From NCBI RefSeq assembly GCF_000315625.1, contig NW_005434671.1, positions 248,001-312,000 on the forward strand: a DNA stretch of 64,000 nucleotides, given 5' to 3'. Shown here in pieces: positions 59,391 through 64,000 of the stretch (positions are counted from its first letter, which is position 1; each line of letters opens with the position of its first letter). The notes under the pieces were generated by a model, which worked only from the letters and a program-made list of their open reading frames with translations, was not told the DNA's origin and did not search any database. A program made the translations under genes and the position numbers. This DNA is from Guillardia theta CCMP2712. Lineage: Eukaryota; Protista; Cryptophyta.

Positions 59391-61645
59391 TTACGGCACT
59401 GATACTTCACGATCTCCGAGTTTGCAGAGATGAATGTAGACGTCTGTTCCATGCCCCTGGTAGGATCGAGTTACTTATCCTGCTCATGGCAAACGCCCAA
59501 TGAACGCATGCCCAGCTCCTCCTTACCTGCATCGACATGACGTGCAGATCTCCTCCAAACGCCCTCGCATGGATTCGGCTCAGCGGCAGGCCGTGAGCAA
59601 AACCTGCCATGATCGGCCGGCCGGGTGTCTGCGGGTGACAGCAGGTGAGAGAAGCAGGGAGAGCGATCTTGCTCTCACATTGAGCTGCTGAAGTTTCTCC
59701 AGCGTGTTCCCAGCAGTTGTGAACGTGTAAGTCCAGAGGCGCTGGAGGCCAACGTGAGAAAAAGGTTTCAACTCGCGGCTCTTCTTACGTCCATCCCTGA
59801 TCTCGGGATTCCTCCTCCCTTGTCCGAAATTTTGATGGCGATGTCTTCACTGCCCTCAGCAAAGACGACAGTGATGGGTTCCATCTAAGACAGCCAGCGC
59901 TCTCAGCCCCTCCCTCCCCACCCAGCACATGCCCACCTTCTCCGGCTTGTCGCGAAAGCGCTCGGTTACAGCTCTCATGGAGTTCTACATGGGAGGATGA
60001 GAGTCATGGAAGCGGGCGACATATCAGGCAGCCTCTACCTTGATCAGCTCGAAGAAGATGTAGTGGAGATGCTCGGGAATGTAGCTCAGCTTCAGCCCCA
60101 GGTTCCCCTCTAGGATAACCTGCCATGGCGGCGTCAGTTGGCCGTCTGGAATATTGAGGGTCGGAGACAAACCTCAGGAGATATCCCATAGCTCATCTCG
60201 CAGATGGCCCGGGCATCTTCAATAGCGTGCTCGCAGACGACAGAGGGCTGCGGCAACCGATCACGCGAAGGAGAGCGAGGAGGAGGGAGCTGACACCACG
60301 CATTCTTTCTGGATGATACCGATGAAGCCTTCTTGAGGATGGTGTAACATGATATGCTGAGAGATCTTGACGTCACGAGCGGTTCTCGCGCTCCTCTCGA
60401 CCGTACCTGACCGATCAAAACTCTCACGCCCACTCTTGAAAGATAGAATCTATCCAGGAACTGCCCGAAATCAAAGGGCACTAACAAGAAGCGAGAGACG
60501 TCACTCTATACACCACCAAAAGGTTGCAAAGATACTTCCGGCATGCATCAAGACGTCCTTCTGCTGCTGCACATCCTTCCTCTCCTTAGCTAGCTCCTGC
60601 AAGTTCATGCAAACTTTCAGGAACGAAGGCATCTCCATACCCAATCGCTCACCTGCAGCCCTCGAGCGATGTTCGCTTGCACACTGTTATGCTCGGTCTT
60701 GATGTCATCGAGCATTTCAGTAAACCTTTCCTCCAGCTCTGTGGTACTCGGCTTCGGAAACCTGACCAGTCACCAAGTCAGGAGGAGGAAGGGATATACA
60801 CTGAGCTCACCTGCGGATGCGGAAAAAGCTCCTCTCGTACAACTTCCGCACTCCTTTTATTGACACCATCTCTCCCAGGCCGAAGGGCAAACGTTTCAGC
60901 TCCCTCGCTCGCCTTGCAAGGCGGACAGGCAGCTCCTCGTGTAGGAACTGGGCAGCAAGGAGAAGTGTACGCTTGCTCTTGTTCGACGATGCACCGAACT
61001 GATACATCTCTTTCAGCGTGATTGTTGCAGGATGTCTGTAATATTGATCAGAGCAATCAGAGAAGAGCCAGAACAAGAACGAGGGGAGTAGAGTAGGAGG
61101 CAGTAGCCGTACATCGTCAAACATTTGCACCAATCTCATATCAGCATTCATCGTCATTCAAGTCAGCCAACAGCACGCTTTTTCACTATCATCGTCGTTC
61201 AACATTTTCTCTGCAGCATTGCCCTTGGGTTCTTCTACATCGATGTGTCTCACCTCAGCGAGTAGTACATGATCTCGTGGGTGTCCTCCTCCGATTCCGC
61301 TCCGTCGATGCTCATGAGACGAACGTGTCCAGGCGCCGCCAGTGAGTTGTGAGGCTGCTCAGGAACGCTCTGCCGCCATACATTCGCCTTGCATTGAGAT
61401 GTCTTGGTTGCCGCTCCCTGCCGCACAGGAGGAGAGGAGGCACGCCGGTCACTCGAAGAGTTGGAGTAAGCATGGGCCTGCTTGGACGAGGCTGCTCCTA
61501 GAGGGAAGTGAAGGTGCAGGTCGAGCTGAGGAGTGGCTTGGGAGGGAGAAGAGGAGGGGGAGGGGGAGGGCAGGAGGGCAGGAGGCAGGCGAAGCCCCAT
61601 GGAGCAGCGGCTCAAGGAGCCTTGCCAGCGGCTCATGGACAGCAT
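59391..61645 (-). CDS. Mitochondrial pyruvate dehydrogenase kinase / BCKD-kinase family protein
   Basis: AAQFLHEELPVRLARR, FLDRFYLSRVGVRVLIGQ, HLHYIFFELIK|NSMRA, IKISDKGGGIP, MAGFAHGLPLSRIHARAFGGDL, GHGTDVYIHL. Confidence 0.93.
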
Positions 61646-61801
61646 GGGGGACGTAATGACCTCTGGGGGTGGGTCGTAACATAGAAGAAATCAGGGGTAC
61701 TTGCCGAGGGGTAGGAATTATAAGGAAATTTAAGGAACCGTCTAAAAATAGAAGGAACCATAAGGAACTTCAAGGAACCTGTAAGAACCGAAACTTGTTA
61801 C

Positions 61802-64000
61802 ATGTTGGCGATGCGGAAGGGAGGAGCTATGACGTCCTCCTCTTCCTCCTCGCCCTCTTCCTCCCTCTCCTCCCTCCTGCCCTTCGTTTGCCTCGGATAT
61901 GCCGTCGCATTCGCTCCCTCCCTCCCCGGGGTATCCAGGATGCGCCTGCCAGCGTCCGCCCCCCGTCCTTCTGCCGGCCTCCGACCCCGCACAGTCTCAT
62001 CTCCTTGCAGCAGGTTGCTGTCCCTCCGGGCGTCGCTTTCCGATGGCACGTGGGCCAGGTGCGAGCGCGTCAAGGTGGACGGCAACGTCGCTGCCTACAC
62101 GGAGGAACTCGAGGGAGCTGAAGTGGGGGTTATCCAACTGGACAAAGCCCTCACCCCTGCACAGCCCTACTACGAGGTTGAGATCGTGGAGCCAGGAACA
62201 CAATCTTGGATCGGCGTCGGCCTGGCCGACAGTTCCTACTCTCTGGACAAGCAGCCGGGATGGGATGTGAACTCTGTGGGGTACCATGCCGACGATGGGT
62301 CTTACTACCGCTGCCCCGTCCCCGATGAGATGAGCAAGAGGTGAGTTTTGGTTAGCTCCGATGTCTCTCCTCCTCTTACTGGGAGGCCTCAGTGGACGAC
62401 CAAGCCCGATGCCTCTCGTCGGGGCTCCTTTCCCTTGCTCCAAGGGAGATAAGATGGGCATCGGCCTTGAGTTCGACGACCGTGGAACCGCTCCCAGTGG
62501 CTTCCCCAGACGCGTCTTCTTCACCAAGAACGGGCTGGTGAAACAAAGCAGAACATGATTCATTCTTCCTTCTTTGCTTGATTGTTTTCCCCTCTTTCTT
62601 GTCATCGGGAAATCTCTACTCCGTCTCCTTCTTTCTCCTCTTCGTCCTCTTTCGTTTTTTCCTCGGATGCTGCTCGTAGCATTTCCTTCTTCCGCTCGCT
62701 AACATAGACGGCAGTACCTCGGGAGTGTGATCTTGGAGAAGCAGTTCCACTACTCCCTGTACCCGACTGTTGGCTTCAACTCTCCCGGCGCAAAGGTCTC
62801 CGTCAACCTCAAGGCTGACTACCCCAGGTGAGGAGGAGAAGAAGAAACCTGTTCTCCCAGCGCTCTTGTCCTGATTGTGTCCTGCAGCGTCCAGCTCATG
62901 CACGCTGCTCAGTTCTTCGGAACAAACGAGTACGCCATCGACATCACTTCCGACGCCATCGCCAAGGGCGCCGATGTCAACGTCAAGGACGCAGCTGGCA
63001 GGACGCCTCTGGTCTGCCTGCCTCTGCAAGTTGCTCGGAAAGGTGCTCACACTTTACTCGCAGCACATGGCCTCGGCCTACGGAGCCACCCCCATCGCTT
63101 CCCTCCTGCTGGAGAAGGGAGCTGATCCAGATGTGCAAGACAACATGGGCTTGACTGCCCTCCACATGTCTGCTGGCTACGTCAGGCCTACCACAACTAA
63201 GCTTCTGATCGAGAACGGAGCTGTAAGAGCCTTGCTCCTCTCCTTCTCTGCCCTCTCGTTGCTCTTGTCCCTCCTCCTCCTCCTCCTCCTCCTCCTGGTC
63301 TGATACCCGTAACAAGGACCCTGAGCTCCGCACTCAACGCAACGAGAGGGCGCTTGACTTGATCCGAAACTTGAGGAACATCACTCAGGTGAATAGAAAC
63401 TCTTTCATTATTCATTCGTCCCCTCTTCTTGCTCCTTCCTCCTGTCCTCCTACCTCAGCTGCTACGGCGCATCATCCTTCGTTTCCTCCTCGTTCCTGTC
63501 TGCTCTTTGACAAGCGGTGATCAAGGCAACCTCCATGGGAGGACTCGTCAAGGATAAGCGTTATCCCCTCATGACTGGTACGTGCGCCTTGCTTGGATTG
63601 CCCCCCGGCCCCCCGCTCCCCCCCATCCTTCCTCGAGCCTCCCCAACTCAACCTTGATTTATCCACCTCATGATTCTCCGTCCTCCGACACTCTCCCCCG
63701 CCCTTCCTCGCCATCTCTATCTCCCTCCCTCCTGCCGATGTTTCGTCAACGGGTCCACAGATTCTGTCGTGATCTTTCCCTTCTCTTTTACCCTCAACCC
63801 TCACTCCTCCTCACTCCTCACTCCTCACTCCTCCTCCTCCTCACTCCTCCTCACTCCTGCATATACATCTGAATCTTCTTGACGTGCAGAGGTCATGGAG
63901 CTTCTCCTCGGAGTCACTGAGGACCCCAACGAGTGGGTTGTCCCTGCTCCTCCCAAGCTCTCCCAGGAGCAGGAGAAGGCGATCGCTGACGCCACTGAGA
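61802..64000 (+). CDS. Plastid-targeted SPRY + ankyrin-repeat protein (runs off window)
   Basis: AVA|FAP presequence; SPRY YYEVEIVEPG..IGVGL..QPGWDVNSVGYHADDG, VFFTKNG, LYPTVG; ankyrins GADVNVKDAAGRTPL|HMASAYG and GLTALHMSAGYVRP. Confidence 0.85.

What the first reader, a model, noticed from the sequence alone, without database searches (positions are those of the whole stretch)
62890..64000. cpSRP43-like ankyrin segment in a plastid-targeted SPRY protein of a red-lineage alga
Seen: GADPDVQDNMGLTALHMSAGYVRPTTTKLLIENGA, then ALDLIRNL and KRYPLMT|EVMELL, in a protein with an AVA|FAP presequence and a SPRY domain. Known (from memory): plant cpSRP43 has [35 protein letters not shown]; it chaperones LHC proteins and is considered green-lineage specific. 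Inference: a cpSRP43-related chaperone with SPRY in place of the N-terminal chromodomain, a candidate missing antenna-protein targeting factor in cryptophytes.
Basis: partly seen in the sequence, partly recalled or inferred. Interest (0 to 1): 0.72.

Follow-up and report, generated by a model that had tools for sequence, protein, structure and literature searches.

The report
cpSRP43-like ankyrin protein in cryptophyte plastids
A cryptophyte alga encodes a plastid-targeted protein whose ankyrin core most resembles the antenna-protein chaperone cpSRP43, thought to exist only in green plants and algae, making it a testable candidate for the missing antenna chaperone in red-lineage algae.

Summary
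An 11-exon gene starts at window 61802 and ends about 310 bases past the window. It encodes about 494 residues: a bipartite plastid presequence (AVA|FAP), a SPRY domain, four ankyrin repeats with a capping helix, and a small helical tail weakly like STI1/HOP DP. Full-length orthologues occur in other cryptophytes, including Rhodomonas lens.

The cpSRP43 link is partly supported. Repeats 2 to 4 align in register with plant cpSRP43 at 41-47% identity over 92-100 residues. The match includes the motif HM(A/S)AGYVRP, whose tyrosine is cpSRP43 Tyr204, the hook for the DPLG turn of antenna proteins. For this segment cpSRP43 is the best solved structure and the best hit outside cryptophytes. Searching back from cpSRP43, cryptophyte proteins beat every generic ankyrin I held.

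Three things weaken it. The protein has no chromodomains. The tree leaves cpSRP43's position unresolved. Fold searches do not separate it from other ankyrin proteins. It is therefore not a cpSRP43 family member.

A metagenome scan also found a sister family in haptophytes, supported as a clade with the cryptophyte family. Most G. theta antenna genes examined carry FDPLG before helix 3. An antenna chaperone role is inferred, not shown.

The parts
61802..62340 (+). Exon 1. It holds the start codon, the bipartite presequence (hydrophobic signal peptide ending AVA|FAP at 61901-61918, then a Ser/Pro/Arg-rich transit-like stretch) and the first part of the SPRY domain. The donor is AG|GTGAGT.
   Evidence: ORF. 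Pfam SPRY E 2.3e-4. tblastn of the orthologues P0153 and P0151. Orthologues read DEMSKSGRP across this junction.
62393..62537 (+). Exon 2, the middle of the SPRY domain (SGRPSPMPLVGAPFPCSKGDKMGIGLEFDDRG...FFTKNGL).
   Evidence: 72% identity to P0153 residues 166-212.
62715..62827 (+). Exon 3, the end of the SPRY domain (YLGSVILEKQFHYSLYPTVGFNSPGAKVSVNLKADYP.). It ends in phase 2.
62888..63011 (+). Exon 4. It holds the degenerate ankyrin repeat 1 (VQLMHAAQFFGTNEYAIDITSDAIAKGADVNVKD) and the start of repeat 2 (AAGRTPL).
   Evidence: This stretch matches the general ankyrin consensus only.
63064..63222 (+). Exon 5, the rest of repeat 2 and repeat 3. It includes HMSAGYVRP. The Tyr codon at 63178-63180 corresponds to cpSRP43 Tyr204.
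   Evidence: Pfam Ank E 5.7e-9. 57% identity over 51 aa to Olea cpSRP43, in register. It is the most identical G. theta match to cpSRP43 (56%).
63317..63388 (+). Exon 6, the first helix of the atypical repeat 4 ([24 protein letters not shown]).
   Evidence: 43% identity over 23 aa to cpSRP43 residues 241-263. 90% identity to P0153.
63526..63577 (+). Exon 7, the loop of repeat 4 and the start of the capping ('bridging'-type) helix (ATSMGGLVKDKRYPLMT + G). The acceptor at 63524-63525 was chosen because 63515 would break the frame.
   Evidence: The length agrees with all orthologues.
63890..64000 (+). Exon 8, cut by the window end (it ends at 64002). It holds the capping helix (EVMELLLGV) and a linker (EDPNEWVVPAPPK...). 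Three more exons follow outside the window: L001 2549-2608, 2654-2701 and 2753-2809, with the stop at 2810-2812. They are separated by in-frame mini-introns of 45, 45 and 51 nt and encode the DP/STI1-like tail.
   Evidence: Pfam STI1-HOP_DP is weak, E 0.0068 to 8.7e-4, below the curated cut-off.

Best explanation
This is a nuclear gene of a cryptophyte, very probably Guillardia theta. It encodes a stroma-targeted protein with four parts in order: a SPRY domain, four ankyrin repeats, a capping helix, and a small DP/STI1-like helical domain.

The ankyrin block is a cpSRP43-type substrate-binding module. It has the same number of repeats, the same atypical first and fourth repeats, the same register, and the same tyrosine hook in repeat 3.

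[quoted passage not shown] It would act as an ATP-independent chaperone that catches newly imported chlorophyll a/c antenna proteins by the FDPLG turn ahead of their third membrane helix. It would then keep them soluble in the stroma until an Alb3-type insertase takes them.

It lacks the chromodomains that couple cpSRP43 to cpSRP54 and Alb3. Hand-over must therefore use other contacts, presumably through the SPRY and DP-like domains.

Shown here: the gene, its architecture, its conservation, and its sequence affinity to cpSRP43. Inferred: common descent of the ankyrin module (about 0.6), stromal location, the client, and the mechanism.
For: Gene and architecture: exon model. Full-length orthologues in cryptophytes, including Rhodomonas lens. 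Pfam finds SPRY at 2.1e-14 plus Ank in the orthologue P0151. The AlphaFold model has pLDDT 77.7 and shows a SPRY sandwich, ankyrin helices, a long helix and a C-terminal helical bundle.

Affinity to cpSRP43:
- BLASTP of P0151 against Olea cpSRP43 gives 81 bits and 47% identity over 92 aa, in register.
- Profile-profile comparison gives 45% over 96 columns, probability 99.5.
- A joint alignment gives 39-41% over 100 aa with only two short indels.
- With the Ank3-Ank4 segment, cpSRP43 (3deo, 3ui2) is the top solved structure at E 2.5e-5.
- Its single-stretch score is 29-46 bits. No single repeat printed for ankyrin-R/B or tankyrase exceeds 13 bits.
- In the word-seeded search of 5.8 billion proteins, the best hits outside cryptophytes were cpSRP43s, at 51 bits and 60-63% identity.
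- Searching back from the cpSRP43 ankyrin region, cryptophyte proteins score 60-82 bits and the best generic ankyrin scores 54.
- 9 of the 34 columns where the two families agree are rare in 50 background ankyrins. One is a Pro seen in none of the 50.

Function-related points: the Tyr of GYVRP is Tyr204, around which the DPLG motif wraps (chain position 120; PMC6244792). The ankyrin repeats of cpSRP43 alone suffice for chaperone activity (PMC2898393). 9 of 13 G. theta antenna genes carry FDPLG; in the 8 of these where the helix-3 motif was located it lies about 20 residues upstream. All but one full-length orthologue (P0154 has Tyr) have a signal peptide followed by Phe. Alb3-family and SRP54 genes exist in the genome.
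Against: There is no chromodomain anywhere in the protein. The cpSRP54- and Alb3-binding parts of cpSRP43 are therefore absent.

The careful ML tree on 125 columns leaves cpSRP43 in an unresolved polytomy. Holding cpSRP43, cryptophyte and haptophyte proteins together costs 10 log-likelihood units, though this is not rejected (p 0.30).

Fold searches rank DARPins and the AKR2A ankyrin domain as high as or higher than cpSRP43.

Repeats 1-2 match the general ankyrin consensus. Sequence similarity in the capping helix is weak (one search stops before it).

Only angiosperm cpSRP43 sequences were available. The background set was picked by word sharing and is not exhaustive. Ankyrin repeats converge easily. 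No binding, localisation or expression data exist for G. theta itself.
Confidence: 0.45

Rival explanations
1. It is a plastid ankyrin adaptor with other clients. The resemblance to cpSRP43 would come from convergence on the ankyrin consensus plus a few chance matches. SPRY and ankyrin repeats are both general peptide-binding modules. The protein could sort or hold other imported cargo, for example lumen-bound phycobiliprotein subunits or Tat cargo, as other plant stromal ankyrin proteins do.
For: The tree does not resolve a cpSRP43 relationship. Fold searches are generic. Repeats 1-2 are consensus-like. The nearest ESM Atlas clusters are plain ankyrin families.
Against: The in-register match includes non-consensus residues and the functional Tyr. 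cpSRP43 is the best per-domain match in both directions among what could be tested. The presumed ligand motif is present in the antenna proteins.
Confidence: 0.3
2. It is an import-associated co-chaperone of the AKR2/Tic40/Hop type. The DP/STI1-like tail would recruit Hsp70, Hsp90 or ClpC, or bind hydrophobic segments itself. The ankyrin and SPRY parts would pick up a broad set of precursors.
For: There is a weak STI1-HOP_DP match in the tail (E 8.7e-4 to 0.0068), and it is precomputed for two orthologues. The AKR2A ankyrin domain is structurally close, at Z 20.4-20.6 with 36% identity.
Against: The DP match is below Pfam's cut-off. AKR2 did not appear among the 42 solved chains matching the Ank3-Ank4 segment, where cpSRP43 was first. 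AKR2 is cytosolic and has a different domain order (own knowledge).
Confidence: 0.15
3. It is a chaperone of tetrapyrrole-synthesis enzymes. This is the second, cpSRP54-independent role described for cpSRP43.
For: [quoted passage not shown] The module retained here is the chaperone part.
Against: Nothing in the sequence points to these clients. The conserved feature is the DPLG hook.
Confidence: 0.05

Closest known systems
cpSRP43 (chloroplast signal recognition particle 43 kDa protein; structures 3DEO, 3DEP, 3UI2)
   Same: Both are stroma-directed. Both have four ankyrin repeats with degenerate first and fourth repeats and a capping helix. Identity is 41-47% in register over repeats 2-4, with HMAAGYVRP including Tyr204. 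An N-terminal beta-rich domain abuts repeat 1.
   Different: CD1 is replaced by SPRY. CD2 and CD3 are replaced by a short DP/STI1-like helical domain, so there is no aromatic-cage site for the cpSRP54 tail and no chromodomain site for the Alb3 tail. The host is a red-lineage complex alga with chlorophyll a/c antennae.
Haptophyte plastid-targeted ankyrin family found here (for example Chrysochromulina parva P0279; loci L036-L038, L046, L051, L054, L060, L064, L068, L069, L071-L073)
   Same: It has a signal peptide followed by an aromatic residue and the same four-repeat module (GRTPLHF.AG.GLAPA..LL and GLTPLHMAAGY). It forms a supported clade with the cryptophyte module (98/83). Identity to cpSRP43 is 36% over 121 aa.
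   Different: It has no SPRY. Short KITVKPPS-type repeats lie N-terminal and a lysine-rich helix lies C-terminal. It reads GYANA where the cryptophyte family reads GYVRP. Length is about 270-345 aa.
AKR2A (Arabidopsis ankyrin repeat protein 2A; ankyrin domain structures 4TUM, 5EID)
   Same: It is a four-repeat ankyrin domain of very similar shape (Z 20.4-20.6, 36% identity in structural alignment). It is also a chaperone of membrane proteins bound for the chloroplast.
   Different: It is cytosolic, its ankyrin domain is at the C-terminus, and it lacks the GYVRP hook region. It was not among the sequence matches to the Ank3-Ank4 segment.
SPRY domains of RanBP9/RanBP10 and human SPRY-only protein (5JI7, 5JIA, 2YYO)
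   Same: These are the best structural matches of the N-terminal domain (Foldseek E 4.5e-16 to 1e-12). They are peptide-binding beta-sandwiches.
   Different: They are cytosolic or nuclear scaffold proteins. None is fused to a cpSRP43-type ankyrin block or targeted to plastids.

Membership tests
cpSRP43 | Four ankyrin repeats forming the substrate-binding domain, with the conserved Tyr204 hook in repeat 3 | tested here: met
   The alignment is in register, and HM(A/S)AGY(V/C)RP is conserved in all cryptophyte orthologues and in the window. Tyr204 was identified from chain position 120 of the 183-residue 3DEO construct and from PMC6244792.
cpSRP43 | N-terminal chromodomain CD1 capping repeat 1 | tested here: not met
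   Pfam finds SPRY (E 2.1e-14) and no Chromo. The fold search of the N-terminal domain hits SPRY proteins.
cpSRP43 | C-terminal chromodomains CD2 and CD3 (binding sites for cpSRP54 and Alb3) | tested here: not met
   No Chromo match. The tail is helical in the model. In the lists, no chromodomain hit lies on the same strand within a few kb of a significant ankyrin hit.
cpSRP43 | Bridging helix capping repeat 4 | tested here: inconclusive
   A long helix is predicted at the right place (model residues 138-152; 317-330). Sequence similarity there is weak, and hhalign stops before it.
cpSRP43 | Groups with cpSRP43 in reciprocal searches and in a tree | tested here: inconclusive
   Best in both directions within the limited sets. 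A quick tree groups the three families against 50 background ankyrins (SH-aLRT 89). The careful tree with more background leaves cpSRP43 unresolved. The AU test gives p 0.30.
cpSRP43 | Binds the L18/DPLG loop of antenna proteins and keeps them soluble | not testable with these tools
   The motif is present in 9 of 13 G. theta antenna genes. The one complex prediction gave no verdict.
cpSRP43 | Stromal location | tested here: inconclusive
   The sequence shows a signal peptide followed by Phe and a transit-like stretch, in the window and in orthologues. No localisation predictor or experiment was available.
Ankyrin repeat superfamily (Pfam Ank, Ank_2, Ank_4, Ank_5) | Pfam matches above the curated cut-off | tested here: met
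   Exon 5 scores Ank 36.2 bits (cut-off 21.1). P0151 scores Ank_5 59.6 and Ank_2 57.3.
SPRY domain (PF00622) | Pfam match above cut-off and a SPRY beta-sandwich fold | tested here: met
   The orthologue P0151 scores 54.1 bits (cut-off 26.3). Exon 1 alone scores 21.6 bits, below the cut-off because the domain is split over three exons. The Foldseek top hits are SPRY domains.
STI1/HOP DP domain (PF17830) | Pfam match above cut-off | tested here: inconclusive
   Scores are 13-20 bits against a cut-off of 29.1. The family is listed in the precomputed Pfam for P0037 and P0268. The model shows a small helical bundle.
AKR2 family | Sequence match of the ankyrin domain, and domain order with the ankyrin domain C-terminal | tested here: not met
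   The resemblance is structural only. AKR2 is absent from the 42 sequence matches to the Ank3-Ank4 segment. The domain order differs.

The most novel reading that the evidence does not exclude
The antenna-binding ankyrin module of cpSRP43 is not confined to the green lineage. Cryptophytes and haptophytes carry descendants of it, either inherited or acquired from a green alga. These descendants have lost or never had the chromodomains and were rewired with other partner-binding parts: SPRY plus a DP-like tail in cryptophytes, and short beta-repeats plus a basic helix in haptophytes. They would form an antenna-protein delivery route that does not depend on SRP54. That would explain how chlorophyll a/c antennae reach the thylakoid in algae said to lack cpSRP43.
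Probability: 0.35. Interest if true: 0.85.

Novelty: new variant of a known kind. Interest (0 to 1): 0.7.

Why it matters
cpSRP43 is the only known dedicated chaperone of light-harvesting proteins. The literature states that it is restricted to green plants and algae and absent from diatoms and other red-lineage algae (PMC10269134). How the very abundant chlorophyll a/c antenna proteins cross the stroma in those algae is an open question.

This finding gives a conserved, plastid-targeted protein that keeps the substrate-binding ankyrin block and the tyrosine hook of cpSRP43 in a different domain frame. A sister family exists in haptophytes. Together they are concrete candidates that can be tested with established assays: aggregation prevention, loop-peptide binding and localisation.

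The finding would also bear on the origin of cpSRP43 itself. It would indicate whether the ankyrin block came first and the chromodomains were added later.

Tried and rejected
- Complex prediction: the ankyrin module (A2) with a 48-residue G. theta antenna loop plus helix 3 (L020:1789-1932) scored 0.31 against a mark of 0.34. That is no verdict and is not evidence either way.
- Whole-protein ranking of ankyrin hits is dominated by proteins with many repeats, because scores add up. I rejected it as a test and used single-stretch scores instead.
- Fold searches (Foldseek, VIA-align) cannot tell cpSRP43 from DARPins.
- The ESM Atlas look-alike search gave only generic ankyrin clusters.
- Two word-seeded searches with P0037 missed cpSRP43 altogether. 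This shows how patchy that index is, so absences there mean little.
- The representative search with the SPRY part returned mostly giant multi-SPRY proteins. It did not return the G. theta protein itself.
- A canonical cpSRP43 was looked for in G. theta. In the lists, no chromodomain hit lies on the same strand within a few kb of a significant ankyrin hit. The nearest pairs are on opposite strands, 2.6 kb apart on C50 (ankyrin hit E 0.87) and 6.6 kb apart on C151.
The window was searched exon by exon by reference, and transcript-derived orthologues stood in for the full-length protein.
Full report
**Where the window lies.** The window is contig C3, 248001-312000, of an 87.1-Mb assembly in 669 contigs. 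From my own knowledge, that size and contig count fit the Guillardia theta nuclear genome. The closest relatives of the gene are cryptophyte transcripts, which agrees with that. The gene continues past the window end, so I read the next bases from locus L001 (L001 position = window position minus 61499).

**Observation.**
- The gene has introns.
- Exon by exon, Pfam finds SPRY in exon 1 (E 2.3e-4), Ank in exon 5 (E 5.7e-9), and a weak STI1/HOP DP match in the last part (E 0.0068).

**Gene model.**
- A HMMER scan of 1.84 billion representative proteins with the mature part of exon 1 returned single-stretch matches of 59-75% identity. These proved to be cryptophyte proteins.
- Further searches gave full-length proteins of 478-484 aa (P0151, P0153 to P0156) and several partial ones. 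P0151 is from Rhodomonas lens.
- tblastn of P0153 and P0151 on the locus matches every exon at 50-90% identity. It shows three gaps of 15, 15 and 17 residues that coincide with GT...AG stretches of 45, 45 and 51 nt. These are in-frame mini-introns.
- The resulting model has eleven exons: window 61802-62340, 62393-62537, 62715-62827, 62888-63011, 63064-63222, 63317-63388, 63526-63577 and 63890-64002, then L001 2549-2608, 2654-2701 and 2753-2809, with the stop at 2810-2812. The product is about 494 residues.
The window was searched exon by exon, and the orthologues served as full-length stand-ins.

**Architecture.**
- The N-terminus is a hydrophobic signal peptide ending AVA|FAP, followed by a Ser/Pro/Arg-rich stretch.
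- The full-length orthologues all have a signal peptide followed by Phe, or Tyr in one case. From established knowledge of cryptophyte plastid import, that pattern marks stromal proteins.
- In the orthologue P0151, Pfam gives SPRY (E 2.1e-14) and several Ank families (E about 1e-15). The tail gives a sub-threshold DP match (E 8.7e-4 when scanned alone).
- An AlphaFold model of the mature orthologue (pLDDT 77.7, pTM 0.67) shows four parts: a beta-sandwich (residues 1-178), ankyrin helices (184-300), a long helix (317-330), and a bundle of four helices (346-410).
- Foldseek finds SPRY domains first (2YYO, RanBP9/10). The first ankyrin structure in that list is cpSRP43 3DEO (rank 21, E 4.4e-10).

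**Is the ankyrin block specifically like cpSRP43?** Whole-protein scores are useless here, because proteins with many repeats add up many small scores. I therefore used single-stretch scores and narrow queries.
- With the segment from repeat 3 to the capping helix (P0037:256-330), the best of all solved structures is cpSRP43 (3DEO E 2.5e-5, 3UI2 5.2e-5).
- In longer queries the cpSRP43 match is one stretch of 29-46 bits. No single repeat printed for ankyrin-R/B or tankyrase exceeds 13 bits.
- The printed alignment reads [45 protein letters not shown] against [45 protein letters not shown].
- A word-seeded search of 5.8 billion proteins with the first 60 residues of P0157 found cryptophyte proteins, then three cpSRP43 clusters (51 bits, 60-63% identity) and one cpSRP43 fragment, with one generic ankyrin protein scoring level with them. 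This gave me cpSRP43 sequences to work with.
- BLASTP of P0151 against Olea cpSRP43 gives 81 bits and 47% identity over 92 residues, with repeat 2 on repeat 2, 3 on 3 and 4 on 4.
- The window's own exon 5 gives 57% over 51 residues, and exon 6 gives 43% over 23.
- Profile against profile gives 45% over 96 columns. A joint alignment of 100 residues needs only a one-residue and a three-residue indel.
The best generic ankyrin protein scores 54.
- Within the G. theta genome, exon 5 is the most identical match to cpSRP43 (56%). A single exon cannot outscore uninterrupted multi-repeat ORFs, which reach 47 bits at 38%.

**Shared rare residues.** The cryptophyte and cpSRP43 consensus agree in 34 alignment columns. 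Nine of those residues occur in at most 20% of 50 background ankyrin windows. One is a Pro at the start of the second helix of repeat 2 that none of the 50 has. Five of the nine are also shared by the haptophyte family described below.

**The functional tyrosine.** The review PMC6244792 states that the DPLG motif of the antenna-protein L18 loop wraps around Y204 of repeat 3, and that mutating it impairs binding. The 3DEO chain has 183 residues, and the Tyr of GYVRP is at chain position 120. Repeat 3 holds only this one Tyr. With a construct starting at residue 85, position 120 is residue 204. The Tyr is conserved in the window (codon 63178-63180) and in every orthologue.

**Limits of the cpSRP43 link.**
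- A quick tree of the 125-column module has 9 cryptophyte, 11 haptophyte, 4 cpSRP43 and 50 background rows. It put all background on one side of a branch (SH-aLRT 89).
- After I added five ankyrin windows from G. theta itself and ran the careful search, cpSRP43 fell into an unresolved polytomy.
- Holding the three families together costs 10.1 log-likelihood units, and the AU test does not reject it (p 0.298). The tree therefore neither supports nor refutes the link.
- Fold comparison does not discriminate. With the ankyrin-only model (pLDDT 85), cpSRP43 is rank 9 and 25 by Foldseek, among near-equal E-values, though it has the highest query TM-scores (0.74-0.76).
- By VIA-align, DARPins lead at Z about 21. 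The Arabidopsis AKR2A ankyrin domain reaches Z 20.4-20.6 with 36% identity, and cpSRP43 is not in the first 50.
- Repeats 1-2 match the designed consensus best.
- All my cpSRP43 sequences are from angiosperms.

**Family membership.** cpSRP43 is defined by CD1, four ankyrin repeats, then CD2 and CD3. No chromodomain is present here. In the lists, G. theta has no chromodomain hit on the same strand within a few kb of a significant ankyrin hit. This agrees with the published absence of cpSRP43 outside the green lineage (PMC10269134). The protein is therefore not a cpSRP43. It carries a cpSRP43-type substrate-binding block in another frame. SPRY stands where CD1 caps repeat 1, and a DP-like helical domain stands where CD2-CD3 bind cpSRP54 and Alb3.

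**A sister family in haptophytes.**
- A scan of metagenome contigs with the joint alignment returned three cryptophyte orthologues, four plant cpSRP43 genes, and a third group of about thirteen loci.
- The proteins of this third group are 270-345 residues long. They have a signal peptide followed by Phe (for example STAF|AP), short repeats of the KITVKPPS type, and four ankyrin repeats reading GRTPLHF.AG.GLAPA..LL and GLTPLHMAAGYANA. They end in a lysine-rich helix.
- The cluster of one of them contains a Chrysochromulina parva protein, so the family is haptophyte.
- Pfam sees only ankyrin repeats in them.
- The Chrysochromulina protein is 36% identical to Olea cpSRP43 over 121 residues, in register from repeat 1 to repeat 4.
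- In the careful tree, the haptophyte and cryptophyte modules form a supported clade (98/83).

**Likely function.**
- Falk and Sinning showed that the ankyrin repeats of cpSRP43 are sufficient for its chaperone activity, that the chromodomains are dispensable for it, and that the DPLG motif is strictly required (PMC2898393).
- I examined thirteen G. theta antenna genes. Nine carry FDPLG; in the 8 of these where the helix-3 motif was located it lies about 20 residues upstream, which is the L18 position. The rest read FDPLN or FDPLR.
- The genome also holds Alb3/YidC-family and SRP54 genes.
- The most economical reading is an ATP-independent stromal chaperone for chlorophyll a/c antenna proteins. 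It would use the tyrosine hook, with hand-over contacts supplied by the SPRY and tail domains.
- This is inference. One complex prediction gave no verdict and counts neither way.

**Novelty.** Full-text searches found no paper that links cpSRP43 to Guillardia or to haptophytes beyond statements of absence. None describes a cpSRP43-like ankyrin protein in red-lineage algae. The scan's own notes hold nothing further.

**Verdict.** The gene is a new variant of a known kind. If the descent and function hold, it is of high interest to people who work on plastid protein targeting.

Noticed in passing
L071:2506-3399 (+); also L036, L037:958-1950, L038, L046, L051, L054:63-944, L060, L064, L068, L069, L072, L073: A haptophyte family of plastid-targeted proteins, about 270-345 aa. 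One cluster holds a Chrysochromulina parva protein, P0279. The proteins have KITVKPPS-type short repeats, a four-repeat ankyrin block 36% identical to cpSRP43, and a lysine-rich C-terminal helix. It is sister to the cryptophyte family in the tree (98/83).
   Followed up: partly
L001:2504-2548, 2609-2653, 2702-2752 (about 64003-64251 in window numbering, just past the window end): Three in-frame GT...AG mini-introns of 45, 45 and 51 nt. Two of the three (the first and third) hold no stop codon, so an ORF reader or gene caller would translate straight through and add 15-17 spurious residues each; the middle one holds two in-frame stops. They were seen only by comparison with orthologous transcripts.
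   Followed up: partly
window 59400-61650 (-): The upstream neighbour on the minus strand is a multi-exon gene for a mitochondrial-type alpha-ketoacid dehydrogenase kinase (Pfam BCDHK_Adom3, E 8.1e-19, for the ORF at 60807-61157).
   Followed up: partly
L001:3135-3878 (-), about 1.1-1.9 kb past the window end: The downstream minus-strand ORF of 247 aa has a coiled-coil part followed by a short collagen-like Gly-Pro-Pro run (Pfam Collagen, E 6.2e-6, just under the cut-off).
   Followed up: no
window 63775-63860 (intron 7): A CT-rich run of CTCACTCCTC-type units. More than 60 similar stretches are scattered over many contigs of the genome. It looks like a common simple repeat of this genome's introns.
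   Followed up: no
P0158 (Rhodomonas transcript): This orthologue lacks 38 residues covering the end of repeat 1 and most of repeat 2. It may be a skipped exon or an assembly gap.
   Followed up: no
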